Part shown: positions 1-34,057 of the stretch, in pieces
How the letters are laid out: the number at the start of each line of letters is the position of its first letter
Position numbering within the stretch: the first letter of the stretch is position 1
Origin: Selaginella moellendorffii
Taxonomy: Eukaryota; Plantae; Lycopodiophyta
Direction: 5' to 3'
Length of the DNA: 64,000 nt
Assembly (NCBI RefSeq): GCF_000143415.4
Contig: NW_003314279.1
Coordinates: 916,091 to 980,090 of the forward strand
Translations under genes and position numbers: made by a program
The notes under the pieces: model-generated
Databases searched by the model: none
What the model saw: the letters and a program-made list of their open reading frames with translations, nothing else
Told to the model about the DNA's origin: nothing

Positions 1-3000
1 TGAAGTGCTATACCATTTTGTCTAGGCTTGCTATTGAAAGACTTGGGTTGCAATGCTCAATTCTTTTCCGGGGAACCTTGCTATTGCTCCTTGAGTAGCT
101 TGGTGTTGGATTAGTGTTGAGTTTGGTCGGAAAGAGAGTGGCATGAGCTTGTCTGTGTTGTGAACAAAAGTTAGCGATGTTGGGTGTTGTAAATCTCTAT
201 TGGTGGAGTGTGGCATTTATGTTGCATTTTGTCGAATTGAGTTGGCACTTGATACTCACATAAACCTTTGAAGTAATGACATTGGCATTGCTCGTGGTGT
301 TGCTCAATCGATGATCAAGTCATTGTGATTTCTATATCATATCCATGTGATAATGAGCAATGTGTTTACGAAGTTGCTTGGTTAAATGATGATCAACCCC
401 AAAGTGGTTGATGGAGAAGCTAGTCTACTTGCACGAAGTAGCATTGTAGTAGCTTTGACTGAATTCTCGGAGATGGTCCATTATGCTAAGCTTAAGTTGG
501 TACCTTGTTTCCTTGAGTTTGCCCATTAGGTGTTGGAAAAGGGTTATAGCATTCACTTGCTATGACTTGTCGGTTGAACCGTTAGCATTTGGAGTAGATT
601 GTTGGATGGAGAAGATGTGTAGTTGGGGCATTGACATCACTAACACTTGTGTTAGTGGAAGTGGCATTGTTATTTCAAGTGATGAGGAATTTTCCTTGGA
701 CCTTGATTTTCCATGTCATTTTTCTTGTTAATGTTTCGGCTTCACATTAGATCTTAAAGGCGATTGAAGAAGAGTGTTAGTGCAATGTGGATATCCAAAG
801 ATGTGGTCTTCGTGATCAAGCCTTGGATGTTCATTTTGCACTTTGCGGATGTCAGTGTTGGATGTCGGTTATATGGGCAAAGATGTTCGATGCTTAAGCA
901 TGTTGTTCGATCATGAGAATTTGTGTTGAGGTGAGCCTATGTGAAGTTGTTGGTAGGAGGAAGTTGGTTGAGTCTTGAAAATTTGCAATCCTGGACTGAG
1001 AGTCATTCTTTCTCTAGGATGGGAAATTTTCCACAAATTTTCTTAGACTTTTCCAATGGCTGATCTATTGATCATTTTGTCTGAAAACCATTCCGTTTTT
1101 GAAGGCCAGTACAAACTAGTGAAGAGGTTGGAGTTGACTTTGGTTGGCTTGAACCTTAGTAAATAGTTTGTATGATGTGGCCTGAAAGGGATGCTGACTT
1201 TTGGGGCTAAGGCAATTGAGTTGGATAGAGTCTAGAGTTGGTGTAGAAAAGTGGCCGTTGCACTTTTCTCAGAAATGTGACCCTTGTACCTTTCTTTTGT
1301 AGCGTTATGCTTGGTGGCAGGTTGCACCTTGCATTACGTTAGACTCTATGAGAGTAGTGAGCTCTCACTGATCTTGACTTGGTCTTGGTGGCCCTGCGCC
1401 TTGGCTAAGGATGGTGATGTCCAACTTAGTTGTTTGAGGTTGAGATGTTGGTACCCGTACTATAGCTTTGTCTATGAGGAGGTTGTGTACCAATATGAGT
1501 CCATCTCATGGTCTTCACTTTAGTTTCGACTGAGTGTTGATCATGCATAGCTAGCCTCTTCAAGGCATGCTCAGAGCTATTGACTAAATGCATTAGTGAG
1601 CTTATTGCGGTTAAGTTGGATTCGAGTGGTCATTTAGTTTGTGCTTGTCTATGAACTTTTATCTCGTACCTGAGGTATTACGTTCATATTGGATGAGTAT
1701 ATGACTCGATGATATGAGTTTAGTGTTGAGTTTTGTGAACGCAAGTTGAGGAGTGATTGTTAGTTCTCTTTTGTGACTAGTGATTACTTGTAGACTTTAT
1801 CAAGGACCGTTGACACTTGCTTTGCTCGATGATGATTTAGCAGTGGTGGGCTTGCTTTACCGGATGGTGTTGCGGAGGATCATGTCATTAGGCTGGCATG
1901 GTTTTTCCATGTTGGCATGTCAATTCCTTTGTCGATATCATTTGGTTACGTTTGGTCTATAATGTTGGATTTCATTGAGTCTTGGAGGTGGTGATTCACT
2001 CCTTGAGGAAGTGTTATCCGTGACTGAGTATTGTTGAGAAATTGGTCTTGGATACTGAGTAAAGTATCTCCGACTTTAGTTAGCTTGGTTGCTAGAGAGT
2101 TTTGAGTGGTGATTCACTCTTGCTTTCTGCTAGTTTTGTTCTGTTGTTGATGGCATTGAAGTGATGCCTTGTCATTGACATTATTGAGGTTGAGATTCAA
2201 AGTGAAATGAGATGTCTCTCCTTAGGATTGATATTGAGTTTCATTAATCTTAATGAAGATAGTGTTGATGATTTGGCTATGGCTTTGTGTTGTTGGCATT
2301 CATGCATTTGCTAGTTAGCAACTGTGTTGACGTTCAAATGAACTGAGTGGCAAGTTGAGTTAGTTGTGTTCTAGACGAGATTATTTAGTAGGGGTTGAGC
2401 TTTGAGCTTTTCCTTGAAAAGTGGTTTAGTCATGGACTATGCTAACTCTACAAGTGGGAGAGTTAGTGATCGATGTTGGAATATTTTGAATCCTTATGGG
2501 ATTTTAGTTGAAATATATCAATCATTGATGATTCTTCTTGTGCTTGCTATGAAGTGAGTTACGTCTTGCTATAGATGGATTCATGGAGAATCATTTAGTG
2601 ATCACTTGTTGAGCATAGCTCCATTGTGCTTAGCTTTTGGATTGATGCAGAAATGTTCTTCATTAGCTTTGGTATTATGAAGTTTGGCTTATGGATGTGT
2701 TGAAGAAGACATTGTGGGTTGCACTATGATTTCTTCTTTAGCATTGAAGTTAGCTTCTATGAGACTCGTGATCATTATTAGGCAAGACTTAGCTATAGGC
2801 TTCTTCAAGCTTTTGGTTCTTTGAGTTTTATGCTCATTATTCCATTTGTTAGAAGTTGTTGGGGAAGGCATTTTGGCTTGTTAGCTTTGATGTTGAAGTT
2901 AGTATTTGCATCTAGCAATCATTAGTAATGATTGACTATCATTTAGGATGATTGATTCTCATTGTCAAAGGTTTTGCTTGATTATCGTTGATCTAGAATG

Positions 3001-4780
3001 ATTTGCTATTCTTCGGGATGGTGGATTCCTTCTTAGACGATGATTCTGCATATCTCTTTTTTTGATAGGATGATCAATGATCTTTTATGATGGTTAGTTG
3101 TTCTCTTTGATGGCTTTTGGCTTTTTGCAATACCACATGTTCTTTGTGGTTTGCTTTGGATTGGTCTCTTGGGTTTGAGACGTCAGTAGGATGTTGCTAA
3201 CACTTGCTTAGGCAAACTTGAGTTCCTTGGTATTGTTGGCTGGGATCTATTCCGATTAGCTTTTGTGATAGTTGGCAGGCATGAGTGTTTGTTGGTCTTA
3301 CCACATTCATTCTCTTCTGTTGATTGTTGCTCGAGTTAATTTTGATAGATTTAGATGTTATTTCCTTTGGGTGATACATTCGCGAGCATTGTGCTTGTTA
3401 GTCAATGATACTTTGTGTTCTTTGAGTTCTCTCTAGTAAGTTGTTGGCTTACTGTCTACTATCTTCGGTAGTTAAGTTTCATCATTGAGTATCCTTGATG
3501 ATATACTAGCTATTGAATTTTGTTGGATGGTCATTCCTATGTTTGCCAAATTATGATGATCTTGGTGGTTCCTATACTATAATACTAGTTTATCGGATGA
3601 TAACTTATTTGGAATACATTTGTGTTCTCATCTAAGCTTTATTCACTGATAATTAAATCTCTAAGATATCATTGTTTATGACTTTGATATAGTCCCTATC
3701 TATTGATCTTTGAGTTTGGGCCAGTATAGGCAGACTGGCTTCGGCACTTCGTGTGCATGTTGAAATCTCTAGTCATGGGGTAGCTACTGTCGACTGGTCA
3801 CATCACCCGCCTCTTTGTCGATGTTCCTTATTTTGTTGAAAGGGCGTGACCGTGTAAACAACTCTAACTGCCTGTTTACAGTAGTCTATCTAAACCTTAC
3901 CGACGGGTTTGGTTTCTTTGCTCAGGAGGGTTGGGGCCTCTGGCTTCTCTCTCTATGTCCCTGCGGGCAGGGCGTATCACACTTTTGTAGCTGGGTGACA
4001 CCTAGAGCAGCAAGGGTGGCTGACTCCGTTGGTCATTTCCTTGTCGGTGACGGCCGGAAGGTGTCTGAGCTGGTAGCGCATCCGCGTTAAACAAAGAGGT
4101 TGCTCCCTAACTCATTTAAGTTGATGCATTTCTCACATAGTGTGAGTACCGTGAACTTTTTCGAGAGTTGTTTCCTTGGCGGTATTCTGGACTGGAGTAT
4201 GCATCGACGAGGACGTCGATCTTCCCCAAGGGGGGGAGAGTGTCGCGAATGTGACTTCGGGTATCGAAAGTTATCTGTCGACCAGTCCTTACGGACACTC
4301 TTTCCTTACTGCCACGATGGCAGGAGGTCGGTATTGCTGGACCCTTTATCAGCCCCTCTTGTTCAAGTGTTAGTAAACTGGACTTAGCATCTGTACTTGG
4401 CCGGATGAGCATAAGGACGGAATTCCTAAGTGTCTATTTGGCCAAGCATACTTGGCCCGGCTTTTTAGTTCTCTTTTGCTCTGTCTTGCACTGGCTTGAC
4501 AAGAACCCTCGCGCATTGAGATTGGTCCCTCAATATCGCTACATGATAGCTTACCGTGTCTGCCAAACACCCTCGCTATCATGCCCTTTGTGTTAGTCTC
4601 ATTTTGGTCCCAAATGCTATTTATGGAAAGTGTCCAGATTTGCTTATTTGGCATATTTACGGAATGTAGAGATTGGCCTGAACACAATGGTGTTCGTCCC
4701 ATGTCCAAATTCGCAATCTAAGGACATTCCATATTTAGTAAGTTTCGAGTTTGTCCCAGAGACTAACTCCTGATACTAAG
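1..4780 (-). mobile_element. Highly degenerate LTR-retrotransposon internal region (probably Ty3/Gypsy-like)
   Basis: No long ORF; strong T/G skew on the + strand, consistent with decayed minus-strand coding DNA. Only faint RT-like traces at ~0.5-1.3 kb. Degenerate tRNA-iMet PBS-like motif ctcctgatacta at 4767-4778 (canonical reverse complement gctctgatacca). Confidence 0.5.
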
Positions 4781-11379: not shown

Positions 11380-12826
11380 TTTTAAACGTGGACAAAAGCA
11401 ACTCACTTTGAAGCCAATAATTAGCCAAGATCTAGCCAAGATTATTGCCAATTTAAGCTATGGAGCAAAGAGAGGCCAAGAACTCCAGCCCACTGAATCT
11501 AAGAAGAGCTAGGAAAACCAAGAGCAAGGTGAAGTCTACAACTTCTGAAGAGCTTGGAGCTTGAAGATTGCATACTGGAGTTTAAAGATTGTATGAAGCA
11601 TAGAGCATGAAGCGTGGAACATCATCAGCAAAGCTCACAAACTTGCATTTTGCATCCATCAGTCTCATGCTTGGCAACATGCATGAGACTTGATCATGGT
11701 TACTGTTCTGATTCTGCACTCGTGTGTCCTTTATATTTACTACGGTGAAAGTTTGTTTGCAAGCGAATACACCAAAACGAGAGGAATTGCTACTATGAGC
11801 AGACGTAAGGCCTCCGCAAGAAACAAAACTCGATTCCATGCTTTAGGAATGTTTTTGTGTAAATAAACCATAAACATTGCTAAGCAATTCTAATATTACT
11901 TCCAGTAGAAAACTTGCTCTAGGACGAGCTCTCCACCAAAGCGGAGATCCACCCGAGAGTAGCCAAGGAAGTACTGCCGCCAAAAGGTTCTTCAAAGCTG
12001 TGGTCGAAGAAACAAAACGCTAAGAAAGCGCCACTCGAAGAACATGGAGCTCGGGAAGGACGTACGGAATAAAAAACAGAAAAATGAAAGGACGCATACC
12101 GAGAAACCGAGAAGCTTGAGCCTAGCAGCTTTCTGGATTGAGAAATTTTCATTCCTGCTATAAATCTCATCCAAGACTGGAAACGAAGCAAACAGGACAA
12201 GGAAAGAATGAGAGCGATAGCCTGGATCATCCTGTGGTCAATCCTGGCTCCCTTGGCATGAGAGCGATGAATAAATAGCAGCTGGAATTGTCTACGAAGA
12301 CTATGGCACTTGGAAGGTTACAATTGCCGATGATGTAACAGGAAAAGAGTGTGTAAGCACACATACGCTGAAAGGCATGTCATGAACCTATCAACAGTTT
12401 GGTTGGGGCCTGCTCAAAGCCGACAGTTAAAGAGTTTTTCATATGCAAAGAGTAAGCGTATACCAAAGGGCAATGAAAGCTTCGAAGCTGCTACGTTGGC
12501 CTGTTCGAAAGCGTTATAAGAAACTAAACCAAAGGAGCAAGCATACATGACGAGGGAGAACAAACCAGCTGTCCACAAAAAATAGAAAGACCAATCTTCT
12601 AGAGTATAGATCTCGCATTCGATCCCCTCTCTCTCTCTTCAAAGCACGAAGCATTCGGGGGAGAAGGTTACAAATGGGGCCACGATATCAAGGAAGAAAG
12701 AATGATACCTGAGCTCTCAAGCTCGCCATAGCCCTTCCGCGACCTAAAAACTAATGCGAGGAAGAATGTTAAATATCAAATCTAAAAACACTCTATCCAA
12801 TAAAGCGGTACTCTTAAAGATGAAAT

Positions 12827-14124
12827 CTAAAACAGTCTATCCAACAAAGGGCTCGCGTCCTTGTCGTAGCGTCCAGCCGCCTCCTTGACTGCTGTCTCAA
12901 ACTCCCTCCATATTTCTCGCTCCTCTACACTCAAACGTTTTTTTAGCCGTTCTTTTCCTAGAGATTCCCTACCTCGCGGTGGAGATATTGGAGGTCCGCT
13001 GCTATCGCCTGGGCGGGCACAATCGCCTTGAACGCGCCGGCATCTCGAAGATCCATGTCCAAAGGAGAGCAGAACCCGAAATCCAGGATCCATATGCTCC
13101 TCCCGGAGAGATGCAGCTGGACGTCGCGGAATCTCCAGCCCTCTCCAAACACGACGCGAGCAAACAGCTCCCCGACGCTCCGAGCGACGCTGCTGGCTTC
13201 CAGGTGTGGAAAACTCCTGCACATCACAACGCACACACAATTAGGCGATAGCAGCGGACCTCCAATATCTCCAGAACTATCTCCCGCGAGGCAGGGAATC
13301 TCTAGGAAAAGAACGGCTAAAAAAGCGTCGTGTTTGGAGAGGGCTGGAGATTCCGCGACGTCCAGCTGCATCTCTCCGGGAGGAGCATATGGATCCTGGA
13401 TTTCGGGTTCTGCTCTCCTTTGGACATGGATCTTCGAGATGCCGGCGCGTTCAAGGCGATTGTGCCCGCCCAGGCGATAGCAGCGGACCTCCAATATCTC
13501 CACGGCGGAGTTTGTCGCGCTCATGCTCCGTGAACGTGTAGAGCCAAGCCCGGTCCCCAAGATCGTCACTGTCGGATCTTGTAGGTCCTCTGGAAGAGGG
13601 ACTCCGCCGCCTCCTCCTCGATGGGTGGCAACCTCTGCATGACAATGACGGGAGCGTTAATGCGCTTGAGATGCTTGAGCACGAGAGGCCTTATCTCTTC
13701 GTCCACGCGCTGGAGCAGTGCCTGTCCGTTTGGGGCGAAGGCGATCACCTCCGGCACGCGAAGCGACGAACCGATCTCCTTGCAAGCCCTGGCAACAGCC
13801 CTCTGCGCCTCCACCTCTCTTGATCGCGTCGTACGGGATGTCTTTCCGCTTGGCAACTTTGATGGCGATCTCTCCCTCGCATATCACCAGCCCCTGCATT
13901 CCTCCATCCCAACTCGTTGCCGGTTCCTGCTTGACCGCGCTCGTGCCCGCTCCGACTTGCCGGCGCTCCACTAGGTTTCCTCCGCCGTGCTTGCCGCGAT
14001 CCTTGCCGCCGCCAGTCGCCGCCACCTTGCCGCGCTCGTCCGTGCCAGGATCGCGATCGGCCGCTCCACCTTGGCGTGCCGCTCTGCCACCGTGATCCCG
14101 ACGCTTGGGCTGCCCTGGCGCCAT
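12827..14124 (-). pseudogene. Protein-kinase-like gene (resembles fungal DUF3669-annotated kinase-like proteins), frameshifted and rearranged
   Basis: Spread over several frames: GGMQGLV...IAIKVAK, AIKR/EVEAQ...LRVPEVIAF...IVMQRLPPI, GWRFRDVQLHLSGRSIWILDFGFC, NYLPRG, EIWREFETAV. Frameshifts near 13815 and 13570, plus an inverted duplication. Confidence 0.6.
12979..13503. repeat. Perfect 179-bp inverted repeat (12979-13157 / 13325-13503) with nested shorter inversions
   Basis: Arm coordinates sum to 26482 at both ends (no net indel) and both arms translate identically. In addition, 13243-13273 is the reverse complement of 12980-13010 and 13285-13328 of 12934-12977. Confidence 0.95.
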
Positions 14125-14207
14125 AGAGCTCTTCACCTCGCCCTAAACAAACACACTGGATGGCCTCACACTGGATGGGACCTTTATACCGTGGTTCGCG
14201 GGATCAA

Positions 14208-14322
14208 CATCTCTGCCGTCGAAACGGACGGCTGCGATTACCTTCCATAGAGAATCTGTAGTGTTACCTTTACGCTACTTTATACTAATCATCATCTCTG
14301 CCGTCGAAACGGACGGCTGCGA
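14208..14322. repeat. 30-bp direct repeat with internal hairpin in a divergent intergenic region
   Basis: catctctgccgtcgaaacggacggctgcga at 14208-14237 and 14293-14322. Confidence 0.85.
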
Positions 14323-15732: not shown

Positions 15733-16307
15733 ATGGCGGCGTGCATCCAAGCGTTGGCAATTAGAGCAACGCTTCCATCTACGTTTCTGGGTACGTCGCA
15801 GGTGTCATGGAGGCGGCAACAGCGCCTGGTTCTCGCCAATCCATCCAGCTCCCGGGTCTCGGCGTGGTTTAAATTCGGGAACCGGGGATTGGATTCGCAA
15901 GGAGCTGGAATCTATGGCAGCCAGAAGAGGGACGATTTCAACAAGGACGACGTCGAACAGGTCAGAGATTTTCCTGGAATGTTTGTTCTCATGGTTCTTT
16001 CTCTCTCTCTCTTTTTTTTCTTGGTTTTGATCCTCTCTTTGAGCAGTACTTCAACTACATGGGAATGCTGGCGACCGAGGGATCCTACGATAAGATGGAC
16101 GCGCTGCTCAACGAGGGTCTCCATCCGGTGGACATTCTATTGCTCATGGCTTCTTCCGAGGGAGATAAGCCCAAAATCGAGGAGCTTCTTCGCGCTGGAG
16201 CTAGCTACACGGTGAAAGACGGCGAGGGAAGAACAGCATTGGACAGGGCTAAAGACGACGAGATCAGAGATCTCATCCAGAACTTCCAGACCGTCCCTTC
16301 CCCGTGA
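15733..16307 (+). CDS. LTD: LHCP TRANSLOCATION DEFECT / GDC1 chloroplast ankyrin protein (exons 15733-15960, 16047-16307)
   Basis: WFKFGNRGLDSQGAGIYGSQKRDDFNKDDVEQ|YFNYMGMLATEGSYDKM...HPVDILLLMASSEGDKPKIEELLRAGA, with one GT-AG intron. Confidence 0.93.
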
Positions 16308-16360
16308 AAATCTGTCCATCGTATAGGATCAATCCAAGTTTCCCTCCAAGGTTTTGTTGG

Positions 16361-17851
16361 ATGCGATGGGTCACACAATGGCGATCTTCTTCGTCGTCGA
16401 GTTATGGGCGACGCTCGATCCATTCCTCCTCGCTGCTTGGTGGGCGGTTTTCTTTCCCTCTGGGCAGCGATCAGCAGCGCCTCCAGGCCCAATTCGCCTC
16501 ACAGCTCCAGGCATGCCGAGATCTGGCCACCGCGCGGCGGCTCCACGCCCGGATCCTCGCCACCGCTCTTCGATCCGACACCTTCACCGCGAATCTCCTC
16601 GTCCAGATGTACGGACGATGTGGCTGCCCGGAGACCGCACGCCAGACGTTCGATGGCATTCTCGCAAGGAACTCCTTCTCCTGGAACATACTCATGGCGG
16701 CAAATGCCCACAATGGGCATCTTGAGAACGCGAAGAGCGTCTTTGACAAGATGCCGGAGCGCGACGTGGTGACATGGACGGCTATGATGGCGTCATTTGC
16801 CGAGAGGGAAGATCTCTTTCGTCCAAAACAGTTGTTTGATTCCATGCCGGAAAGGAATGTGGTGTCCTGGAACGTCCTCGTTGGAGCATATGCGCAGCAA
16901 GAACAACTTGAGTCTAGCAAAGGAGCTTTCTTTCGAATGCCCTGCCACAGCATCGTTTCCTGGAACTCTAAGCTTACAGCTTACGCGCAAGGGCAGCAAA
17001 TCGATCGCGCAAGCGAGTTCTTTGAATCGATGCCACAGCGCGACGCGATTTCCTGGAACATCGCAATCTCAACACTTTCCCAAACAGGAGATTTGGTAAA
17101 AGCAAAGAAGCTGCTTGATTTGATGCCGGCGGTGGGGATCGTGTGCTGGACGGCAATGGTGGTGGCAAACGGGCAGCTCTGTCAACTAGAAGAAGCGAAG
17201 AAAATCTTTGATTCTATGCCGGATCGTGATGATCTTGCTGGGACGGCTATGGTGACCGCATTTGCGCAGAATGGAGAAGTGGACTCTGCCAAGGCTGTGT
17301 TTGATGCGATGCCAGAGCACAGCGTCTACGCCTGGAATGCTCTCCTCGCGGCCTACGCTCTAAATTCCCGCCCGGGTCGCGCTATGGAGATCTTCGCAAC
17401 CATGCCCGAGAAGGACGTGGTCTCTTGGAACGTCGTCCTCGCCATGCTCTCCCAGCGCGATCAAGACGGGCGCGGCAGCGCGATCCAGCTCTTTCAATCG
17501 ATGTTGCTCGAGGGATTCCTCCCAAACGACGTCTCGCATCTCTGCGTGCTCATCGCTTGCAGCCGGGTTGGATCAATCCACGCCGGGCGCGACTGCTTCG
17601 CGGCGATGAGCTCGGATCACGGATCCACGCCTGAGCGCGTCCACTACTCGTGCATGGTCGATCTCCTGGCCCGCACGGGACAGGTCCTCCTCGCCCAAGA
17701 TCTCATCGAGACGATGCCTTTCTTTCCCGACGACGTGGAGTGGCTGACGCTCACGGTGAGCGGAGCTCCCGCTGGACCGAGGCTCATGGATCTCCGGCCT
17801 GGCCGATCCGGTCCCTACGTAGTGCTCTCGAATTCCATGCTAGCGCCGTAA
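16361..17851 (+). CDS. PLS-class pentatricopeptide repeat protein (S-motif run, shortened E domain, no DYW)
   Basis: Eight tandem ~31-aa MPERDVVSW-type motifs, then HYSCMVDLLAR and PYVVLSN. First ATG is 16361 (the ORF track starts at a GTG). Confidence 0.9.
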   Translation: MRWVTQWRSSSSSSYGRRSIHSSSLLGGRFSFPLGSDQQRLQAQFASQLQACRDLATARRLHARILATALRSDTFTANLLVQMYGRCGCPETARQTFDGILARNSFSWNILMAANAHNGHLENAKSVFDKMPERDVVTWTAMMASFAEREDLFRPKQLFDSMPERNVVSWNVLVGAYAQQEQLESSKGAFFRMPCHSIVSWNSKLTAYAQGQQIDRASEFFESMPQRDAISWNIAISTLSQTGDLVKAKKLLDLMPAVGIVCWTAMVVANGQLCQLEEAKKIFDSMPDRDDLAGTAMVTAFAQNGEVDSAKAVFDAMPEHSVYAWNALLAAYALNSRPGRAMEIFATMPEKDVVSWNVVLAMLSQRDQDGRGSAIQLFQSMLLEGFLPNDVSHLCVLIACSRVGSIHAGRDCFAAMSSDHGSTPERVHYSCMVDLLARTGQVLLAQDLIETMPFFPDDVEWLTLTVSGAPAGPRLMDLRPGRSGPYVVLSNSMLAP

Positions 17852-19220: not shown

Positions 19221-20289
19221 AGGTTCTTTGTGATCTCTATCGTCTCTAGCTCCATCTCATTGATTCATGCGATCGATTCGTCAAGAGGATTCCACAAACT
19301 GCTGCTGATCGAGCTCAAGCCACCGAAAAAAACGATTTTTATCTCTTCCACTTAGTAGAGGAAAACGATCCACGGTCGATGGCAGCCTTGCAAAACTCCT
19401 TTTTTTGTGGCGGTGGTGGTGGTACCGATTATCATGTCCTCAATCAATGTCCTCTATATTATCAAAGTGGGCCTCTGCGAAATTGGAATAACCACACAAG
19501 AGAACAGATGTACATGTACCATGAAAAAAAGAGAGGGAGGAGCACAAATAAATATATACAAAATAATGTTCATCGAATCAAATCGTTCGTTGGTGTCTGT
19601 CTCGTCTCGCCAATCTCATCTCTCTCACACACTCAAACACACACACACAAAAAAGAGAGGAGCACGGTTGGATTGGATGATCCGTTCTTTCTTTCCAGCG
19701 CGGAGGATCACGTCGTCTTTCGCGGGGTCACATCCTTCCATTTGAATCGACTAAAATTCCCAAGATCCAGAGGACTTTGCGATGCAGCTAGTATGTAGCT
19801 CGCCCTTGATTTGTCTGCGCCTGGAAGTTGGAAGCATCTTCTTTTCGCCACAGCAAATGGTCAAAAAGTTTGCCCTGGACCAAAGCTGACCGTTGACATA
19901 GATCGGTACGGTCTCTGTGCCGCTGACCACGTACGGACGAGCCCAGGTTTACTTTACCCTTTCCAGCCCTAAATCGCCTGTCAGCAGGAAAAGGAATGGG
20001 CCGTCAGATGGTTTTAGGGTAGTGATTTCGTTCGTCGATCGTCTGAGATGATCAGCGCGCTCGTCAGCCTGTTGCTCGAGGGCATGATCTGGTGCTCCGC
20101 GTATGGCCTCGTCGGGGCGCTGGCCCTCTGCCCGCATGTACACTGGACATTGATTCTTCTCTTTGGATGATCGATTGCGAGGAATCCACCGGTGGATCGA
20201 ATGATCGCGGTGATGTAGCGCTCAAATAAAAAATCGCCCATTCTTTCTGATTGATTGGCTCGTTTATCTAGCGAAAAAATCTTCTCGTG

Positions 20290-22200
20290 TTAGAGCCCTA
20301 AGTGCTCGCAGCGCGCTTCCATCGCTGCTCTGGCGGCAGGGCAGCGATCGCAGGTGAGGCGATTTCCCTGGTTGGCTGCGAATGCCTCGCGTCCGGCGCC
20401 AGTGAAGCCGGATTTCTTTGACGACGATGACGAGGAGGAGGAGGAGGAGGATCAGGGGCAGCGGCGCAAGGCGGGCGAGCTGGATTGGGCGACTAGAGCT
20501 CGGGAGCTTGTGATTCAGGATATGAGCTTCCGGAAGTTCACCGACGAGGATTTCCAGGGCCTACTGCCCCCGCATTTGCGAATCTCTAAGAAGAAGGCCA
20601 AGAAGAAGAAGAAGAAGACCAGGGCCAAGCAGGAAGGTGCCGAGGCTGCATTGCAGCTGGCGCAGCGCGATTAACACCAAAAAGAAGAAAGACAAGGACG
20701 ATGATGCGAGCAGCCTCCAGGCTGTGAATGACACCACACCGGTCGATCCAAAGAAGCTCAAAGCGCTGGCCAAGAGGCTTAACGCTCACAGGGAGCGCTA
20801 CATGAACATCGAGCAAAGCTACAGCGACAGCGAAGGTGACGAGGGCGAGGAGGAGCTCACGACCGAGTTGACAGTGGTTTATGAGGAGCGTCGAGAGGAA
20901 GGAGGTGGTGAAGAGTCGGATGATGGCGAGGAGCTTCCAGCGGCCTTGAAAGATCCAAGGCTGCTGGAAATTCGTCTCAACCAGGACTTGGTCGACTCGA
21001 GGGACGTGGAAGAAGTTTTGGAGACGATCGAGAGGGTCAAAGGAAGGTTTGGATTGAGCGCCATCAACGTCGCCACTGCTCTTCACAGGATCGCCAAGCA
21101 TATGGTGACGCTGTCCATGTCCGAGAGAAGAAGGCTCAAGTACGCCAAGCAGTGTGACGTGTTGCTCGTTGCTTCGGCTATGGAGCTTCTTCCGGAATGC
21201 AACGCACAGGGCGTCTCCAACATTGCCTATCTCCAAGATTGGAGGCCACCTTCTTTACCGCGGAGAGATGGAGATAATCGCTCGAGCAGCACTGGCGAAG
21301 GTTGACGAGTTCAATCCCCAGAACATTGCCGGAGCCTTTGCTTCCCATGCAGCACAGCTCGCCCGCACTCTTTGAGAAGCTCATGGACGCTGCGAGCAGA
21401 GTTTCCAAGGAGTTTCGAGCACAGGAACTGGCCCAGCTTCTTTGGTCGTTCGGGTCCATGGCTCGGCCTCTGGATTCTTTCCTGGACTCATCGGCTTTTC
21501 AGCAAGAACAAGGTTCTCCAGAGCTCGGTGAAGAACAGTTCCAAGAGAATCTTTCTCCGGGAAGCTATCGATCGAGCAGCTCTCGAGCATCGTGTGGTCT
21601 TATGCTGTTCTCGGCCAACTCCAGGGTCCATTCTTCGCTCACGTTTGCAAGGAGATACGCGCGTTTGAGCAGCTGGAACAGCACAAGCATATACACAGCT
21701 ATACCAGGTTGTGCTGGCCTCGAAGAGGGAAGGGAAGGATTTGCAGCTTGGCGGGATAGAGAAACGGGCTGCGGGTGCCTGGGAAAAGGAGAGAAGCTCT
21801 CGCAAGTCCACTTCCTTCTTGCAAAAGGATATTGAGAGGTTCTTGGTGTGCACTGGAAGGCAGTGGATCCTCGAGTACGTTGATGCGGATTACTCCCATG
21901 AAGGGCGGTAAAGTTGCGATCTAGGTTAACGGGCCATTCAAAAGGTTTTTTCTTTTTGTGATAGGAGAACTTCTGGGACACACTGTTTTGAAGCATAGAT
22001 TGCTGGGGGCTGCTGGATGGAAGATTATCTCTGCTTCCTATGCTGCGGTGAATTTTTTTTTTCTTTGTTGTAGTGGAGAAAAATGTGTGTTTTGATACAG
22101 TGGGAGAACTTACAAGGAGAGTCGGAGCACGTTGACTTCCTACACAAGCTTCTGGCTCCTCACATCCGTCAAATAGAGCGAGTGAGCGAGCAGTGTGACC
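20290..22200 (+). pseudogene. RAP-domain gene copy A (near full length, ATG deleted, frameshifted)
   Basis: Near-identical DNA to 39360-41471 with multiple deletions; ORF pieces 20354-20674 and 20637-21305. Confidence 0.92.
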
Positions 22201-22299
22201 ACTTTCACCTACCAGTTTCGAGCCAGAAGTAACTCGTGATTTATAAACCAGGAAATTTCCCACACCAGAAAAGCTAAGAACGCCTGGACCGGAATTCCA

Positions 22300-23120
22300 T
22301 CGGGAATTACTGGAACCAGGTTTAGTTTCCTATCATAAAAGTTCTTGACGCCGATGTGACCTTTGAGAAACTTGGTCTTGTAGTATCGGCTCGTAATGTT
22401 GTTGCTGGCGCCTGCCACTAAATCCCGTCCTACCTCTGCTTGATTGGCTAGAGACACCCGGGAGACGAACTAGGCAAGGAGAGTGAGAAAACAACTGCGG
22501 CTGCCACCACTCCCAGGTGCTTTCAATCCATCCTTGAAAGTCGTGTTTCATGATCACAATATCAGGATCATAGAATATATATGCTGGAGAATAATCTACC
22601 CTCTGGGAGCAAGATCTTGGTGCTCCTGCTCCACGTACTCATCCCTTACTTGGTCAGGAGGTCCATCTGGCGAGTGAGGTACTGCGTGGAGCTCACAGAC
22701 CTCTTGAGCATGGCGTGCATTCTCTTGTAGAGCTCGCCGTGGTGGAAGACCATTGCGTGCTCTCCCAGCACGTCCTTGAGCGATCGAGGGTGGCCAGACT
22801 CAAACAGCACCCCCTCGTTGTGCAGCACAAACTTGACGCCCTCCACGTCCGTGACCCGTGAGCAAGCTCGTCTTGAACACCGTCCCATACCTCTCCACAA
22901 AAAGATCATAATAAAGATCATATCAGAGCAACAAGATCATTGTATAGGTACTTCTTTCCCAAGACGTAAGGAGCCTTGGAGCGAGCAATCGTCACGTAAG
23001 GAATGAGCTCCCCAGTGAGAGGCCATCCCATGCTGAGCCTTTCCAGCTTCCGGAACCTCCATGGTCGCCAGTAAGCAAGTGCCACGAGCCTGAGCTCCGG
23101 CGATCCTTGCTACCTGCGCG
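22300..23120 (-). pseudogene. Cytochrome P450 (CYP85 clan, CYP90-like) 5' fragment 1
   Basis: SMGWPLTGELIPY...DVEGVKFVLHNEGVLFESGHPRSLKDVLGEHAMVFHHGELYKRMH; frameshifted, no heme motif. Confidence 0.8.
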
Positions 23121-23646
23121 GAAAGAGAGAGAGAGAGAGAGAGAGGACATTAGTTGGAAAAACTTTTGTGTCGCTATGTGCCAGACTTATTTACCCAGGT
23201 CGGTTGACCCACAAACTCGGTGGCTTTTCGATCTGTCGTGATGCTGTTGCTAGCACCTGCCGCCTCCAGAAGATTCCTTGTAATAGGGAAACAGATGACG
23301 ATTTTGGGCCGGGAAATAATGATGGCGATTCGCTCGATTAGTTTGTATCTAGCAGCATCGCGGGGAACCAAATACAGACAAGAGCATCAAGAGCCGCGGC
23401 TGCGTAGCACGGGGTCGGGAGATGCATCGTGCGGCCTCCAAGACATCGCCAGCGCTCTCGTGGCCATGTACGCGAAACTGCAACCAATTTCCGCTTCGGT
23501 CCTTACGAGGAATTGACGCACGACACGAGCACGACGATGCCGGTTGCAAGGGAAGAGCTGCTCTACAAGCTCTTTGGCCAAATGATTCAAAGGAAGAGGT
23601 GAAACGAGATGTCGAATTATAAAGAATAGATGTACAGGAAACAAAA

Positions 23647-24722
23647 CTAGCACGAGGCTCGAATTTCACCATGTCCTCCCGTGAGAGGCGAGAGCCTACC
23701 CATTTTGATCATGCCATTGGCGAAGGCAGTGAAAAATGCCTTCTGATTGTCCGCAAACTCCCTGACAAAGCCCGCCAGATCACTCTGCAACAGCTGCTGG
23801 TCTGAGAAGAGGAGCGACTGATTCGCTTGGACAGCTCGAAAGTACAAGTTGTCGAACGTGGTGGGGGAGGGATCCAAATTGTTCAATCTGTTTAGGGCTG
23901 TTGGAGGGCAAGTCTTCTCGAGTCGGGACTTGAGGGCCGGATCGATGCTATCCCCTGCGGTTCCGTTGAAGAGGCGGGCGCTGAATGTGGAGCACTGGGC
24001 CTGGCCGATGGAATGGCCTCCTGAGAGCGCTACGAGATCACGCTTGGAAAGGCCCCGCTTTTGGAAGCTCTCAATCAGCTGCGTTGCGGTGAGATTTGGG
24101 CTGGGAATGGCGTCCACCGCGGCAGCGACGCTCGCGGAGCTGGGATTGTCCCGTCGGCCAAACTCTACTGTCCATGACGGGCCACCAAGCTGCAAATTTC
24201 GAAAGAGAAGAAAGCATTTGTAACTCAAATCAATGGAGACCTCACTTACGGCTATGACGGATTCCCGGGCGCTCAGAGCAAGAATGTCCGCGCATGATAC
24301 AGTTTCCGGGCATGAAGTCTCCACGGCGCGTTTGATATTGTTGATGATTTTGAGTCCCTTGGTGGAGCGTCCGTCTCCTCGCTCCTTCCCGACCTGGGGG
24401 AGCAGCGATCCGTCACAGCCCTGAGCGACAGCCAAATAAATGACAAACGAGGACTTATTATTAGAGTACTTACTTGAGCAAAGCAATCGCGGAAGTGGAG
24501 CTTGAGGATGGATGCAGAGGATCGGCTGTCATTGGCAACTTCAAAGCGAATCACGCTTCTAGCGATCTGGGGGAAGTCGGGGCAAGTATTAGCGTAGAAA
24601 GAAGTGGAGAGCTCCGAGGGCGTTGTTGGTGATTCCTGGTGAATTGCATAGCGCCGCAGCAGCGTTAACGCGAGGAGTAATGCTGCTGAGGTGAGTGGAG
24701 CTAGATATTTAAATTGCTGCAT
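23647..24722 (-). CDS. Class III peroxidase-like protein copy 1 (3 exons; distal motif KLHFRDC)
   Basis: Signal/anchor peptide, LSTSFYANTCP, GCDGSLL, VSCADILAL, GRRD, LSGGHSIG, FDNLYF, GEIRASC; two GT-AG introns. Confidence 0.9.
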
Positions 24723-25004
24723 TGTGATCTTTCTTTCACGAGGGAGTGAAGGTGTGAAGAGAAGCTTGGCCTCTTGGCCCAGAACAAGAACAAGCTTCTC
24801 TGGATGGCTTTCAAGAAACAGCAAGAAAACTAGAACCCTAAACTAGACATTGGATTGTCGGGATTTAAGGATTCTCCAACGCGTTCAAATCTCCTTCGTC
24901 GAAGATATGCGAAAGGCCACGATCGATTGGCGTGACGCGAAAAACCGGGGTGTGCGGTTTTTCGCGGAGAATTTTCGCGTTATTTTGGGACCCTTTTTAC
25001 TATG

Positions 25005-25812: not shown

Positions 25813-25999
25813 TTTGAGGGAAGTGTGAAGAGAAGCTTACTCTAAAGAAAGAGAACACGGGAACACGGGAACTCTACTACATATGTGTTCTATTTTCTTG
25901 CTGTTTCTTGAAAGCCATCCAGAGAAGCTTGTTCTTGTTCTGGGCCAAGAGGCCAAGCTTCTCTTCACACCTTCACTCCCTCGTGAAAGAAAGATCACA

Positions 26000-27075
26000 A
26001 TGCAGCAATTTAAATATCTAGCTCCACTCACCTCAGCAGCATTACTCCTCGCGTTAACGCTGCTGCGGCGCTATGCAATTCACCAGGAATCACCAACAAC
26101 GCCCTCGGAGCTCTCCACTTCTTTCTACGCTAATACTTGTCCCAACTTCCCCCAGATCGCTAGAAGCGTGATTCGCTTTGAAGTTGCCAATGACAGCCGA
26201 TCCTCTGCATCCATCCTCAAGCTCCACTTCCGCGATTGCTTTGCTCAAGTAAGTACTCTAATAATAAGTCCTCGTTTGTCATTTATTTGGCTGTCGCTCA
26301 GGGCTGTGACGGATCGCTGCTCCCCCAGGTCGGGAAGGAGCGAGGAGACGGACGCTCCACCAAGGGACTCAAAATCATCAACAATATCAAACGCGCCGTG
26401 GAGACCTCATGCCCGGAAACTGTATCATGCGCGGACATTCTTGCTCTGAGCGCCCGGGAATCCGTCATAGCCGTAAGTGAGGTCTCCATTGATTTGAGTT
26501 ACAAATGCTTTCTTCTCTTTCGAAATTTGCAGCTTGGTGGCCCGTCATGGACAGTAGAGTTTGGCCGACGGGACAATCCCAGCTCCGCGAGCGTCGCTGC
26601 CGCGGTGGACGCCATTCCCAGCCCAAATCTCACCGCAACGCAGCTGATTGAGAGCTTCCAAAAGCGGGGCCTTTCCAAGCGTGATCTCGTAGCGCTCTCA
26701 GGAGGCCATTCCATCGGCCAGGCCCAGTGCTCCACATTTAGCGCCCGCCTCTTCAACGGAACCGCAGGGGATAGCATCGATCCGGCCCTCAAGTCCCGAC
26801 TCGAGAAGACTTGCCCTCCAACAGCCCTAAACAGATTGAACAATTTGGATCCCTCCCCCACCACGTTCGACAACTTATACTTTCGAGCCGTCCAAGCGAA
26901 TCAGTCACTCCTCTTCTCAGACCAGCAGCTCTTGCAGAGTGATCTGGCGGGCTTTGTCAAGGAGTTTGCGAACAACCAGAAGGCATTTTTTACCGCCTTC
27001 GCCAATGCCATGATCAAAATTGGTAAGCTCTCGCCTCTCACGGGAGGACATGGTGAAATTCGAGCGTCGTGCTAG
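26000..27075 (+). CDS. Class III peroxidase-like protein copy 2 (exons 26000-26248, 26302-26472, 26533-27075)
   Basis: Mirror image of 23647-24722 (coordinates sum to 50722 at start and stop); same motifs. Confidence 0.9.
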
Positions 27076-27478
27076 TTCCTATACGTCTATCCTTTTTCAC
27101 TATACTCCATTACAACAAAGAAAAAGAAACTTCACCTCAGTTCCATCCGCAATCTATGCTTCAAAACAGTGTGTCCTAGAAGATCTCCTGTAACAAACAC
27201 ACAAAACGAATCACAAAAAGAAAAAACATCCTAAGAGCTTTGAGTACTGACCTGTGTTCCGAGCAAAATGGCTCCTCGATCACAACTTTACTGCCCTTCA
27301 TGGCAAAATCCAGAGAGTAATCCGCATCAACGTTCTCGGGATCCACTGCCTTCCACTGCACCCCCGGATATCCTTTTGCAAGAAAGCGGTGGACTTGCGA
27401 GAGCTTCTCTCCTTTTCCCAGGCACCCGCAGCCCGCTTCAAGCTCCAAATCCTTCCCTTCCCTCTTCAAGGCCAGCAC

Positions 27479-27566
27479 TGAGACAAATCGGGATCAAAGC
27501 GCACCGCACTAGCGGACAGAACAGGAAAACCCTAATGGACGCGTGGCGAGGGTGTGTCGTGTAACA
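27479..27566 (-). repeat. Copia 3' LTR (88 bp)
   Basis: 86/88 identical to 31700-31787. Confidence 0.97.
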
Positions 27567-30500
27567 CTCCCCCCCAAACCGAAGCCACTCACCAAACCAA
27601 ATCTGTCACGTAGGAGCTGAAACTGGTGTGGCCCCAACGGCTTAGTGAGAAGATCAGCTGGCATATCCTGTGTCCCGAGATGTTGGACGGCGAGGGTGCC
27701 ACTGTCAACCAACTCACGTATGTAGTGAAATTGGACTTCAATGTGCTTCGAGCGGGCATGGTGGACGGGGTTCTTGGACATGGCAATGCTGCTTCGGTTG
27801 TCACACCAAGAAGTAGTGGGGCCAGCTTGTACGCATCCCAGCTCAGCAAGTAACCCTCGAGCCCAAACCACGTCCCTACTACCAGTAGTGAGTGCGATGT
27901 ACTCTGCTTCTGCACTAGAAAGGGCCACCACAGATTGTCGCTTGGAGGCCCACGTGATGGCACCTCCTGAGAAGGAAAGGCAAATGCCAGAAGTCGAGCG
28001 ATGACCTTTGTTGTTGGCAAAACTAGCATCCGTGTAGCATGCTAATGATGCATGACCCCCTGAATAAGCAATGCCATAGTCCATAGTGCCCCGGAGGTAT
28101 CTCACGATATGCTTGGCGGCTTGCCAATGTATGGTGGTTGGTGATGTGTTGTACTGACTCAAGGCAATAGTCGCATATGTGATGTCAGGGCGAGTCATCA
28201 GGGCCAAATATGTGAGGCAACCAATGAGATGCCGATAGGGAGTCCCAGTGGGTAGAGGCTCACCAGACTGCTCAAGTGTGAGGTCGATAGCACCAACGAC
28301 CATCGGGGTCTTGACAGGGTGGCAATCACGCATACCAAACCGATCCAGCAAGACTTCGACTTTACGTCGTTGGCTAAGCATGTAGCCACCAGAATCAGGA
28401 TCACGTGCGACTTCAAAGCCAAGAAAGTAGGAGACTTGGCCAAGGTCCTTCATCTGGAATTGCTGGCTGAGAGCATCTTTCAGAGCATCAATGGCATCGT
28501 TGTCATCACCCATGATGAGCAAATCATCAACGTAGAGGGCCACAATAACCATGCACTCAGCATGACCATTGACATACACATTGTGATCAGCATGACAGCG
28601 ACGAAAGCCTTGAGCACGTAGGGTGGCATCAAATTTTTGATACCAAATACGGGAGCTCTGTTTTAAGCCATACAAAGCTTTTCACAATTGCCATATAGGG
28701 CCACCAGGGGTAACATCATCCTCAAAACCAGGAGGTATATGCATATAGATGTCCTCTTGCAAATCCCCATTCAGAAATGCAGTTTTGACGTCCATATGGT
28801 GGACTTGCCATTTGCGAGCAGCCGCAAGGGCAAAAAGAGTACGGAGGCTGGCCATTTTTACAACCGGTGAGAATGTTTCATCGTAGTCAAGGCCATGGAC
28901 TTGGCGAAAACTGCGAACAACCAACCGTGCCTTATAACGTACAACCTGGCCATCTTTCCCATACTTTTTGGAAAAAATCCATTTTGGATCCAAAACACGT
29001 CGTCCCGGTGGCGCTGAATCAACTGGAACATAAGTTCCGTTAACCCGAATGGAAGAAACTTCTTCCGCAATAGCTTCCATCCAAGATGAAGCCTCAGGTC
29101 CTGAGATGGCCTCATCATAAGTCATGGGAATGCCGACGTCAACAAGGCCACAAAAGTCATCAAGCTCTGCAGCATCTGCTTCAGCATTTTCCCGGACTTT
29201 TAACGAGGGCCGACGTTCCCGGGGGTGATCAAGAACTGGCATCGGATCAGGCATGCCACGACGTCGACAAGGTGGTGGAGGTGTCGGAGGCCTGTCCTCG
29301 ACTGGAGGAGCATCAGCTGGTTCAAGCATGTCCAGAAGTGGAGGATTCCCCAATGGAATCTCTGGTGGCAACTCATGAATAGGATCTTGAGGTGGAGGCA
29401 AGGGTGGACCATCTCCCATAAGTGGGATCAAAGGAACAAGTCGAGTCTCAGCAATAAAGGAAGGATCTTGAAGAGCCTCTGTAGGCATGGGAAAGTCATC
29501 TTCATTGAACATGACATCAGTGCTTACAATAGCCTTATGAAATGCAAGATCCCACAACTTGTAAGCTTTCCTCCCGATAGTGTCGTCCTGTGCATATCCC
29601 ACGAAGATGAATTTTTTACTCTTGGGATCTAGCTTTTTCCGAAGTTGATCAGGGGTATGTGCGTATGCTGCACAACCGAAGACCCGAAAGTGGGACACAT
29701 CAGGAGTAGAACCTGTCCAAAATGCCTCAGGGGTTTTTCCATCCAAAGCAGCCGTGGCAAGGCGATTTTGTACATGCATTGCTATGGCTATGGCCTCTTG
29801 CCAAAACATCTTGTTAAGATGTGCATCAGCTAACAAAGCACGAGTAGCATTGACAAGAGCACGATTCTTCCTTTCTGCAACACCATTTTGCTGGGGGGTG
29901 TAGCGGGCTGTAGCTTGCAAGCGTATGCCTACATCACGACAAATGCCCCGAAGCTCATTGTTGAGGTATTCACCACCACCATCAACTCAAAGAGCTTTTA
30001 TCTTTCGACCAAGGAGGTTTTCAACGTACGCCTTGTACGTTTGAAAGGCAGCAACTGCATCACTCTTACGCATCAAGAAGTGGATGCATGTTCGACGGCT
30101 ATAGTCATCAATGAATGTGATGAAATATCTTGCGCCATCGTGACTTGGCACGTCCATAGGGCCGCAAAGATCAGAATGGACTAAGTCCAGAAGTCCAAGT
30201 GCTCGATGCTTACTTGGTGAGAAATTCCGGCGGTGATGCTTGCCTAAAACACAAGCTTCACAGAATGTAGATGGGATACGTCGGAAATCCAAGCCAGTAA
30301 CAATATCTTGGGACTTCATCCGTTGAAGAGATTGATAATGAACATGACCGAGTCTTTTATGCCAAAGCTCCGCACGAGAATCTGCCTCCACAGTCTGAAA
30401 GGCCTGAACTGGGTCGACAGCAGTAATCTCATACAAGTCCCCAATGCGTGACCCACGAAGCAACTGTGTACCAAGCATATGAAAGTCACTAGAGTCAACT

Positions 30501-31699: not shown

Positions 31700-31787
31700 T
31701 GAGACAAATCGGGATCAAAGCGCACCGCGCTAGCGGACAGAACAGGAAAACCCTAATGGACGCGTGGAGAGGGTGTGTCGTGTAACA
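31700..31787 (-). repeat. Copia 5' LTR (88 bp)
   Basis: Directly abuts the PBS; 86/88 identical to 27479-27566. Confidence 0.97.
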
Positions 31788-34050: not shown

Positions 34051-34057
34051 TGGGTAA

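What the first reader, a model, noticed from the sequence alone, without database searches (positions are those of the whole stretch)
12934..13503. Perfect fold-back built from the kinase-like gene: candidate young hairpin-siRNA / proto-miRNA locus
The segment order is A-B-C-spacer-B'-A'-C'-B'. B+C forms a 179-bp gap-free, apparently identical inverted pair covering the RDV/WILDFG core, with a 167-nt loop that itself holds inverted copies of A and B. Such nested inversions look like multiple template switches. A transcript from the gene's own promoter would fold into long dsRNA able to target paralogs, as in the established inverted-duplication route to new plant small-RNA genes. Arm identity means it is recent or actively homogenised.
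Basis: partly seen in the sequence, partly recalled or inferred. Interest (0 to 1): 0.75.

Follow-up and report, generated by a model that had tools for sequence, protein, structure and literature searches.

The report
Young inverted gene-fragment insertion in Selaginella
One copy of an uncharacterised, species-restricted gene in the spikemoss Selaginella moellendorffii carries a very recent 288-base insertion made of back-to-front copies of its own neighbouring exon and intron. It most likely arose during DNA break repair, it breaks the reading frame, and it would form a long RNA hairpin if transcribed, but nothing shows that it makes small RNAs.

Summary
Positions 12979-13157 and 13325-13503 are a 179-bp, 100% identical, gap-free inverted pair with a 167-nt loop. 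The loop holds inverted copies of A (45 nt, 96%) and B (31 nt, 100%).

The window is Selaginella moellendorffii. The gene, on the minus strand, is hypothetical protein SELMODRAFT_412572. Its annotated protein reads straight through the antisense copy.

The only relative found is SELMODRAFT_413121 on another scaffold, a co-linear sister copy that is probably the other haplotype. That protein runs uninterrupted across the insertion point.

I therefore read the fold-back as a young 288-nt templated inverted insertion (13220-13507). It consists of two copied tracts plus three short stretches (4, 10 and 23 nt) with no simple inverted template, with at most 3 nt of microhomology at the joins. That pattern fits snap-back or template-switch repair.

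- "Kinase-like" is not supported: no kinase family in Pfam at E <= 1, nothing significant in PDB sequences, and no relatives outside the species.
- "Paralogs to target" were not found; only the sister copy exists.
- Either strand would fold into a 179-bp perfect hairpin. At 525 nt the foldback is too long to qualify as a miRNA gene.
- Transcription and small RNAs could not be tested.

Overall: a real, recent structural mutation and only a potential hairpin-siRNA source. Modest interest.

The parts
12979..13157 (-). Arm 1: the in-situ, sense part of the exon (segments C+B), encoding VVFGEGWRFRDVQLHLSGRSIWILDFG...AIAADLQYLH
   Evidence: 100% complementary to 13325-13503. Co-linear with P0002 residues 202-278 at 96% identity.
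13325..13503 (+). Arm 2: inverted copy of the exon part. It reads as sense on the + strand and as antisense within the minus-strand gene.
   Evidence: It carries the window-type residues V, F and R rather than P0002's G, L and G.
13220..13507 (-). The whole 288-nt insertion relative to the sister copy. In sense order: 4-nt filler, inverted exon copy (179), inverted intron copy (41), 10 extra nt, second inverted B copy (31), 23-nt filler.
   Evidence: P0002 reads ...ERDKLQEVFPHLE... with no break, while the window has AAACTC at 13508-13513 and CAGGAG at 13214-13219. The boundaries are inferred from protein, not from the sister copy's DNA.
12935..12979 (-). Segment A: the last 7 bases of the exon plus most of a 50-nt intron (intron 12923-12972, GT..AG)
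   Evidence: Direct reading. The splice is inferred from P0002 co-linearity ...REEREIW....
13284..13328 (+). A': inverted copy of the intron segment. 96% identical, with one internal A/G difference; its last 4 nt overlap arm 2 as junction microhomology CGT.
13243..13273 (+). B' in the loop: a second inverted copy of the exon end (31 nt, 100%)
13274..13283 (+). Ten extra bases between B' and A'. With them the loop copy reads ...LQYLQN, as in sister protein P0002, whereas both long arms read ...LQYLH.
13220..13242 (-). 23-nt filler with no other copy in the window. Alternatively it is the tail of an ancestral intron.
   Evidence: no second match with up to 3 mismatches
13158..13219 (-). Single-copy in-situ exon part (..FPHLEASSVARSVGELFAR) that forms part of the hairpin loop. 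It lacks 2 nt relative to the P0002 reading (QEVF versus QE-F).
13505..13785 (-). Upstream coding pieces of the gene in two different frames (EIGSS...TYKI, then DSDDLGDRAWLYTFTEHERDKL). The window has 1 nt where P0002 has 21 nt (PFSQAKQ), a net 20-nt frameshifting difference at about 13574.
12827..12922 (-). Last exon in this copy (EREIWREFETAVKEAAGRYDKDA...), up to the stop
12961..14124 (-). Extent of the annotated model SELMODRAFT_412572 (P0001, 350 aa). About 97 of its residues are translated from the antisense copy and fillers.

Best explanation
This is a real and very young structural mutation in one copy of an orphan Selaginella moellendorffii gene (SELMODRAFT_412572, minus strand).

Proposed origin (inferred): a break, or a stalled replication end, between the codons for ...DKL and QE... 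was repaired by error-prone synthesis that switched template several times onto the wrong strand of the sequence just downstream.
1. One tract copied the exon end and the intron start (13010 to 12935, 76 nt), stuttering at the exon/intron-side boundary.
2. A second tract copied 13157 to 12979 (179 nt).
3. Short fillers of 23 nt and 4 nt closed the joins.

Shown: the anatomy of the result, a 288-nt insertion in which the exon core lies antisense upstream of its own sense copy. This copy's reading frame is broken, and it also carries a 20-nt frameshifting difference and a 2-nt difference relative to the sister copy. The annotated protein is therefore an artefact of an accidental open frame through the antisense copy.

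Most likely the insertion does nothing useful and is a pseudogenising lesion. If the locus is transcribed from either strand, the RNA must fold into a 179-bp perfect hairpin. That would be a substrate for the DCL4/DCL3-type Dicers this species has, and the siRNAs would match only the locus itself and the sister copy SELMODRAFT_413121. Transcription and processing are untested.
For: Structure.

Copy includes intron sequence, so the template was DNA.

Junctions: CGT microhomology at the C'/A' join; a partial CGC.G match at the outer join; none at the B'/filler join; fillers of 4, 10 and 23 nt, the 23-mer being unique in the window.

Species and gene.

Sister copy P0002: it is co-linear from about 14035 down to 11932 and reads uninterrupted across the insertion point. 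The published assembly holds two haplotypes about 98.5% identical (PMC7801247).

Age: the arms show 0 differences in 179 bp, whereas P0002 differs at 3 or more codons in the same stretch, and both arms carry the window-type residues. The window's other inverted duplication has 17 mismatches in 1185 bp.

Hairpin: dG -487 and -475 kcal/mol, z = -30 and -34.

Dicer repertoire: DCL1/3/4 present, no DCL2, no 24-nt peak, no PHAS/TAS loci (PMC5569507).

Known mechanism: snap-back or fold-back templated inverted insertions at breaks are documented (PMC11724301, PMC5728401, PMC4912351).
Against: - The sister locus was seen only as a predicted protein, not as DNA. A fold-back there that the gene caller spliced out cannot be strictly excluded, although the window's flanks offer no GT-AG pair that would give the P0002 reading.
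- Documented snap-back insertions are mostly tens of bases. Tracts of 76 and 179 nt are long and fit replicative template switching (FoSTeS/MMBIR) at least as well.
- The loop copy differs from the arms exactly at the B|A boundary and resembles the sister copy there. This hints at a second template or a two-step history that a single simple event does not explain.
- No independent reads were available to rule out an assembly or cloning artefact.
Confidence: 0.7

Rival explanations
1. Working hairpin-siRNA locus at the earliest stage of the inverted-duplication route to new small-RNA genes. The gene's promoter, or read-through from neighbours, transcribes both arms. Dicer-like enzymes then cut the 179-bp stem into siRNAs that silence the locus itself and, in trans, the intact sister copy.
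For: A perfect 179-bp stem is predicted for either strand. The arms are derived from a gene that still exists as a near-identical sister copy. The annotated start of the locus lies about 300 bp from a divergent PP2C gene, so some transcription is plausible. The species has DCL1/3/4. The inverted-duplication model is established for plants (PMC3237417).
Against: There is no expression or small-RNA evidence of any kind. No paralogs exist beyond the sister copy. Rfam finds nothing. At 525 nt the foldback exceeds the 300-nt limit for miRNA annotation. Both gene models are patchy and orphan, so there may be no functional target to regulate.
Confidence: 0.15
2. Assembly or cloning artefact. The inverted segments come from chimeric clones or from mis-joined reads of the two haplotypes in a low-coverage heterozygous shotgun assembly.
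For: The assembly contains both haplotypes. The loop copy carries a sister-copy-like variant (LQYLQN), which could mean reads from the other haplotype were mixed in. No independent assembly holds any ORF with this exon.
Against: Four distinct junctions with fillers and microhomology form a repair signature, not a collapse or a simple mis-join. Haplotype mis-joins normally give direct duplications, not inverted ones. Cloning in bacteria tends to delete long inverted repeats rather than create them (general knowledge). The arms carry this haplotype's variants.
Confidence: 0.1
3. An older inverted duplication, possibly built in two steps with the B'A' loop copy first, whose long arms are kept identical by gene conversion between them.
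For: The loop copy differs from its source by one internal substitution and 10 extra bases, and it preserves a CAGAAC variant that the in-situ copy lacks. The long arms are perfect.
Against: The sister copy's protein shows no interruption. A single internal substitution in 41 nt is within the divergence expected if the template was simply the other haplotype. Nothing requires conversion when recency explains the identity.
Confidence: 0.05

Closest known systems
Templated inverted insertions from snap-back / fold-back synthesis at DNA breaks (SD-MMEJ, polymerase-theta end joining) and replicative template switching (FoSTeS/MMBIR)
   Same: The inserted DNA is an inverted copy of sequence within 300 bp of the join. 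There are several tracts, short microhomologies and untemplated fillers at the junctions (PMC11724301, PMC5728401, PMC4912351).
   Different: The tracts here are 76 and 179 nt, whereas described snap-back insertions are mostly 5-34 nt. One tract may have used a second template. The enzyme responsible cannot be inferred from sequence.
Inverted-duplication model for the birth of plant MIRNA and hairpin-siRNA genes (Allen et al. 2004, as cited in 10.1101/213314 and PMC3237417)
   Same: A gene fragment duplicated in inverted orientation gives a long, perfectly paired foldback that is complementary to the founder gene.
   Different: The foldback sits inside the founder gene itself. No small RNAs or transcript are known. 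No gene family exists to regulate, only a sister copy. The foldback is too long for a MIRNA.
Natural inverted-repeat alleles that silence homologous copies in trans (for example soybean I-locus CHS repeats, rice LGC-1, Arabidopsis PAI1-PAI4; recalled from general knowledge, not checked here)
   Same: A structural allele carrying an inverted repeat of coding sequence, which could act dominantly on an intact homologous copy.
   Different: Those cases have genetic and small-RNA proof and arms of kilobase scale. Here there is only sequence, and the arms are 179 bp.

Membership tests
Hairpin-derived siRNA locus / proto-MIRNA (inverted-duplication model) | Inverted duplication of founder-gene sequence that forms a long, near-perfect intramolecular stem | tested here: met
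   179-bp perfect stem with a 167-nt loop; z = -30 and -34
Hairpin-derived siRNA locus / proto-MIRNA (inverted-duplication model) | Both arms transcribed on a single RNA | not testable with these tools
Hairpin-derived siRNA locus / proto-MIRNA (inverted-duplication model) | 21-24-nt small RNAs mapping to both arms from one strand | not testable with these tools
   No small-RNA read data are available. Rfam has no match.
Hairpin-derived siRNA locus / proto-MIRNA (inverted-duplication model) | Complementary target genes in trans | tested here: inconclusive
   Only one relative exists, the sister copy P0002 (94-96% identical in the exon). There are no other paralogs.
Plant MIRNA gene (2018 annotation criteria) | Foldback no longer than 300 nt that yields one precise miRNA/miRNA* duplex | tested here: not met
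   The foldback is 2 x 179 + 167 = 525 nt. Duplex precision is untestable.
Protein kinase-like superfamily | Significant match to a kinase or PK-like family or to a solved kinase | tested here: not met
   Pfam gives no kinase family at E <= 1 for the pieces, P0001 or P0002. PDB phmmer best E is 0.19, to non-kinases. The HMMER scan finds no kinases.
Protein kinase-like superfamily | Catalytic-loop D..N together with DFG, a VAIK lysine and a glycine loop in one reading frame | tested here: not met
   DFG is present. 'FRDVQLHL' has no Asn. The IAIKV-like string lies in a different frame from the rest. This rests on direct reading only.
Protein kinase-like superfamily | Kinase fold | tested here: inconclusive
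   The single-sequence AlphaFold model of P0002 has mean pLDDT 34.4 and pTM 0.20. It is too poor to search with.
Templated inverted insertion (snap-back / template switching) | Insert matches nearby flanking DNA in inverted orientation | tested here: met
   Of the 288 nt, 251 lie in copied tracts: 179 nt at 100%, 41 nt with one internal substitution, and 31 nt at 100%.
Templated inverted insertion (snap-back / template switching) | Multiple tracts joined by short microhomology or fillers | tested here: met
   Two copied tracts, the first interrupted by 10 extra bases; CGT microhomology at one join; fillers of 4 and 23 nt.
Templated inverted insertion (snap-back / template switching) | An uninterrupted ancestral state exists | tested here: inconclusive
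   Sister protein P0002 is continuous across the site, but its DNA could not be fetched.
MITE / transposon with terminal inverted repeats | Terminal inverted repeats flanked by a target-site duplication, in multiple copies and unrelated to host exons | tested here: not met
   The arms are the host gene's own exon. No other copy exists in the window. No relatives appear in protein space.

The most novel reading that the evidence does not exclude
The sequenced plant carries the fold-back copy alongside the intact sister copy, so it would be heterozygous if the two are alleles. On this reading the fold-back copy is transcribed and diced, and its siRNAs silence the intact sister copy in trans. That would be a 'generation-zero' snapshot of small-RNA gene birth with founder and derivative still side by side, in a lycophyte that lacks DCL2, tasiRNAs and a 24-nt siRNA peak. 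A sub-reading is that part of the insert (the loop copy with the sister-like LQYLQN variant) was templated from the homologous chromosome, which would record an inter-homologue template switch.
Probability: 0.1. Interest if true: 0.6.

Novelty: new member of a known kind. Interest (0 to 1): 0.3.

Why it matters
If real, this is a clean natural example of the first step in the inverted-duplication model: a perfect foldback made from a gene, with the uninterrupted sister copy still available for comparison. Its junctions record how such foldbacks arise, namely by iterative template switching with tracts far longer than those usually reported for snap-back repair. Practically, it shows that the database protein SELMODRAFT_412572 is partly translated from an antisense copy and should not be treated as a real protein sequence. 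It also shows that the 'kinase-like' label rests on a short motif resemblance only. Without transcript or small-RNA data the locus remains a structural curiosity in an orphan, probably decaying gene.

Tried and rejected
- Kinase identity. I ran Pfam on all ORF pieces and on both database proteins, PDB sequence searches on two pieces and an AlphaFold model of P0002 (pLDDT 34, so no fold search was run). None supports a kinase. I first recalled DUF3669 as a fungal kinase-like family. The literature shows it is a vertebrate KRAB-zinc-finger oligomerisation domain, so the sub-threshold hit (E 0.0042, 17.4 bits, below the cut-off of 22) is treated as noise.
- Paralogs. Three word searches at different length ranges and the full HMMER scan were run. 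Hits P0003-P0006 are repeat proteins (P0003 is a bacterial RTX protein) and were rejected as spurious.
- Independent support for the junctions. The 85-aa exon was searched for short ORFs from other assemblies and found nothing.
- Known RNA families. Rfam at gathering thresholds on the whole window and in E-value mode on 12700-13700 gave nothing. No tRNAs were found.
- The bacterial promoter/terminator scan is irrelevant to a plant and was ignored.
- Transposon reading. Rejected because the arms are the gene's own exon and intron.
- Splicing out the insert. The GT at 13503 and the AG at 13217 would give a 287-nt intron, but the downstream exon is then out of frame, so this does not rescue the copy.
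- Source of the 23-nt filler. No other copy exists in the window.
- The Selaginella genome paper could not be read under the id I recalled. Haplotype facts are taken from PMC7801247 instead.

Full report
**Observation.** The region was read directly and scanned for repeats.
- The arms 12975-13157 and 13325-13507 are 183 nt long with one mismatch, at 12978. The perfect, gap-free inverted pair is therefore 12979-13157 versus 13325-13503 (179 bp), with 167 nt between the arms.
- The loop holds B' (13243-13273, 31 nt, 100% to 12980-13010) and A' (13284-13328, 45 nt, 96% to 12935-12979). They are separated by ten extra bases (13274-13283).
- Apart from this cluster, only two other inverted pairs with arms within 1.5 kb turn up in the 64-kb window: a peroxidase gene pair and one 30-nt, 90% match.

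**Organism and gene.**
- The window carries an F-box gene, a PP2C gene, an intron-less PPR gene, a Copia element and class III peroxidases.
- A word search with the sense part of the exon returns hypothetical protein SELMODRAFT_412572 of Selaginella moellendorffii (P0001, 350 aa) at 100% identity. Nothing suggests a human contig.
- The gene lies on the minus strand.
- Reading that strand, arm 1 is the in-situ sense exon. It is preceded by a single-copy exon part (..FPHLEASSVARSVGELFAR) and followed by a 50-nt GT..AG intron (12923-12972) and a last exon (EREIWREFETAVKEAAGRYDKDA..).
- Segment A is mostly that intron, so the copied material came from genomic DNA and not from mRNA.
- The database model P0001 simply follows an accidental open frame through arm 2, A', B' and the fillers. 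About 97 of its residues are translated from antisense or filler sequence.

**Relatives.**
- Pfam gives no kinase family for any piece or for either database protein. PDB sequence searches give nothing significant.
- The word search left the protein open, so I used the full HMMER scan of 1.84 billion representatives with the 85-aa exon.
- That scan's only genuine relatives are P0001 itself and P0002. P0002 is SELMODRAFT_413121, 385 aa, on a different scaffold (2,302,610 bp versus 2,350,400 bp).
- The other four hits are internally repetitive proteins; one is a bacterial RTX protein.
- Word searches over the ranges 47-149, 112-355 and 212-674 aa add nothing.
- P0002 has a sub-threshold DUF3669 match (E 0.0042, 17.4 bits against a cut-off of 22). 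That domain is a vertebrate KRAB-zinc-finger oligomerisation module (PMC6923878), so I regard the match as noise.
- A single-sequence AlphaFold model of P0002 is unusable (pLDDT 34).
- 'Kinase-like' therefore rests only on a DFG string and an RD dipeptide. The gene is an orphan with no annotated paralogs.

**The sister copy as the 'before' state.**
- tblastn of P0002 on the window is co-linear from about 14035 to 11932, including stretches that look non-coding. P0002 is therefore an allelic or very recent sister copy.
- The published assembly is reported to contain two haplotypes of about 106 Mb at about 98.5% identity. One study reads part of this duplication as a 13-15-My-old polyploidy (PMC7801247).
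- P0002 reads ...TFTEHERDKLQEVFPHLEASS...WILDFGLCSPLDMDLGDAG...LQYLQNREEREIW... without interruption.
- In the window, the codons for DKL (ending at 13508) and the CAGGAG that matches QE (13219-13214) are separated by 288 nt (13507 down to 13220).
- In sense order the insert is: a 4-nt filler, the 179-nt inverted exon copy, the 41-nt inverted intron copy, ten extra bases, the 31-nt second inverted exon-end copy, and a 23-nt filler that has no other copy in the window.
- The window's flanks offer no GT-AG pair that would give the P0002 reading. The simplest inference is that the sister locus lacks the insert.
- The window copy also has 1 nt where P0002 has 21 nt (PFSQAKQ, at about 13574), and 2 nt fewer just beside the insert (QEVF versus QE-F). 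Even without the insert its frame is broken.

**Age.**
- The two arms have 0 differences in 179 bp.
- P0002 differs from the window at three codons within that stretch (V/G, F/L, R/G), and both arms carry the window's version.
- The copy was therefore made in cis, or from the sister chromatid, after the two copies diverged.
- For scale, the peroxidase inverted duplication in the same window has 17 mismatches in 1185 bp.

**How it arose (inferred).** Read along the + strand, the added DNA runs as follows.
1. After the in-situ sequence comes the 23-nt filler.
2. Next is a tract complementary to 13010 down to 12935, which is B' then A' on one continuous template, with a stutter of ten bases at the B|A boundary.
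3. A jump back follows, using a CGT microhomology.
4. A second tract, complementary to 13157 down to 12979, comes next.
5. A 4-nt filler, or a mis-copied CGCG, leads into the upstream flank.

This is the signature of iterative snap-back or template-switch synthesis at a break or a collapsed fork (PMC5728401, PMC4912351, PMC11724301). The tracts are much longer than typical snap-back insertions, so a replicative FoSTeS/MMBIR-type process is at least as likely. Sequence alone cannot separate the two.

**An unexplained detail.**
- With its ten extra bases the loop copy reads ...AIAADLQYLQN on the + strand. That is exactly the sister protein's version. Both long arms read ...LQYLH.
- Three things coincide at 12979/12980: the end of perfect arm identity, the ten extra bases, and a 3-nt difference between the two gene copies.
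- A random 10-mer would give Q-N about once in 64 trials.
- Possible explanations are templating of that tract from the homologous chromosome, a two-step history, or chance. The sister locus DNA would decide between them.

**What it does.**
- Folded as RNA, either strand forms the full 179-183-bp stem (dG -487 and -475 kcal/mol, z about -30 and -34).
- S. moellendorffii is reported to have DCL1, DCL3 and DCL4 but no DCL2, no clear 24-nt peak and no PHAS/TAS loci (PMC5569507).
- A transcript would therefore be a plausible Dicer substrate. Its siRNAs would match only the locus and the sister copy; within the window, 21-mers of the arm match nothing outside the fold-back itself.
- There is no evidence for transcription or small RNAs. 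Rfam finds nothing. At 525 nt the foldback is beyond the 300-nt limit in the plant miRNA criteria.
- My best reading is a recent, probably neutral or disabling, structural mutation in a decaying orphan gene (confidence 0.7). Rival readings and their confidences are: a working hairpin-siRNA locus (0.15), an assembly or cloning artefact (0.1), and an older homogenised repeat (0.05).

**Verdict.** This is a new example of a known kind of event, of modest interest. Its main value is as a well-resolved 'time-zero' foldback with its uninterrupted counterpart, and as a correction to a database protein.

Noticed in passing
window 23645-24829 and 25893-27077: A 1185-bp inverted duplication (17 mismatches, 98.6%) separated by 1063 bp. 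Each arm holds a class III peroxidase ORF (279 aa, Pfam peroxidase E 2e-55). The two genes point away from each other.
   Followed up: partly
window 27509-31204 (minus strand): A Copia-type retrotransposon: gag-pre-integrase, Pol beta-barrel, SH3-like and RVT_2 domains spread over three consecutive ORFs broken by stops. It is flanked by 88-nt direct repeats at 27479-27566 and 31700-31787 (98%), possibly LTR edges.
   Followed up: partly
window 20200-22300, 32000-35300, 37300-41500: Three blocks sharing many direct and inverted repeat segments at 90-99% identity, which looks like a scrambled multi-copy element. A 612-aa ORF inside one block (39373-41211 +) has no Pfam match.
   Followed up: no
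window 14203-14237 and 14288-14322: Two 35-nt direct repeats (97%), 85 nt apart, each with a small GC-rich palindrome (GCCGTC..GACGGC). They lie in the roughly 300-bp gap between the orphan gene and the divergent PP2C gene.
   Followed up: no
window 12961-14124 (minus strand); database entries SELMODRAFT_412572 and SELMODRAFT_413121: Both database protein models hop between reading frames in the N-terminal half. One uses an arginine-rich frame and the other a glycine-rich frame over the same DNA. The models are unreliable, and the gene may be decaying in both copies.
   Followed up: partly
window 1-4000: A lower-GC stretch (38-41%) with strong strand asymmetry (GC skew +0.23 to +0.29, AT skew -0.24 to -0.30), unlike the rest of the window. 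Only two short, low-scoring tandem arrays (about 50 nt each) lie in it, too little to explain it.
   Followed up: no
window 16304-17851 (+): An intron-less 515-aa pentatricopeptide-repeat ORF (PPR E 8e-52) just downstream of the PP2C gene.
   Followed up: no
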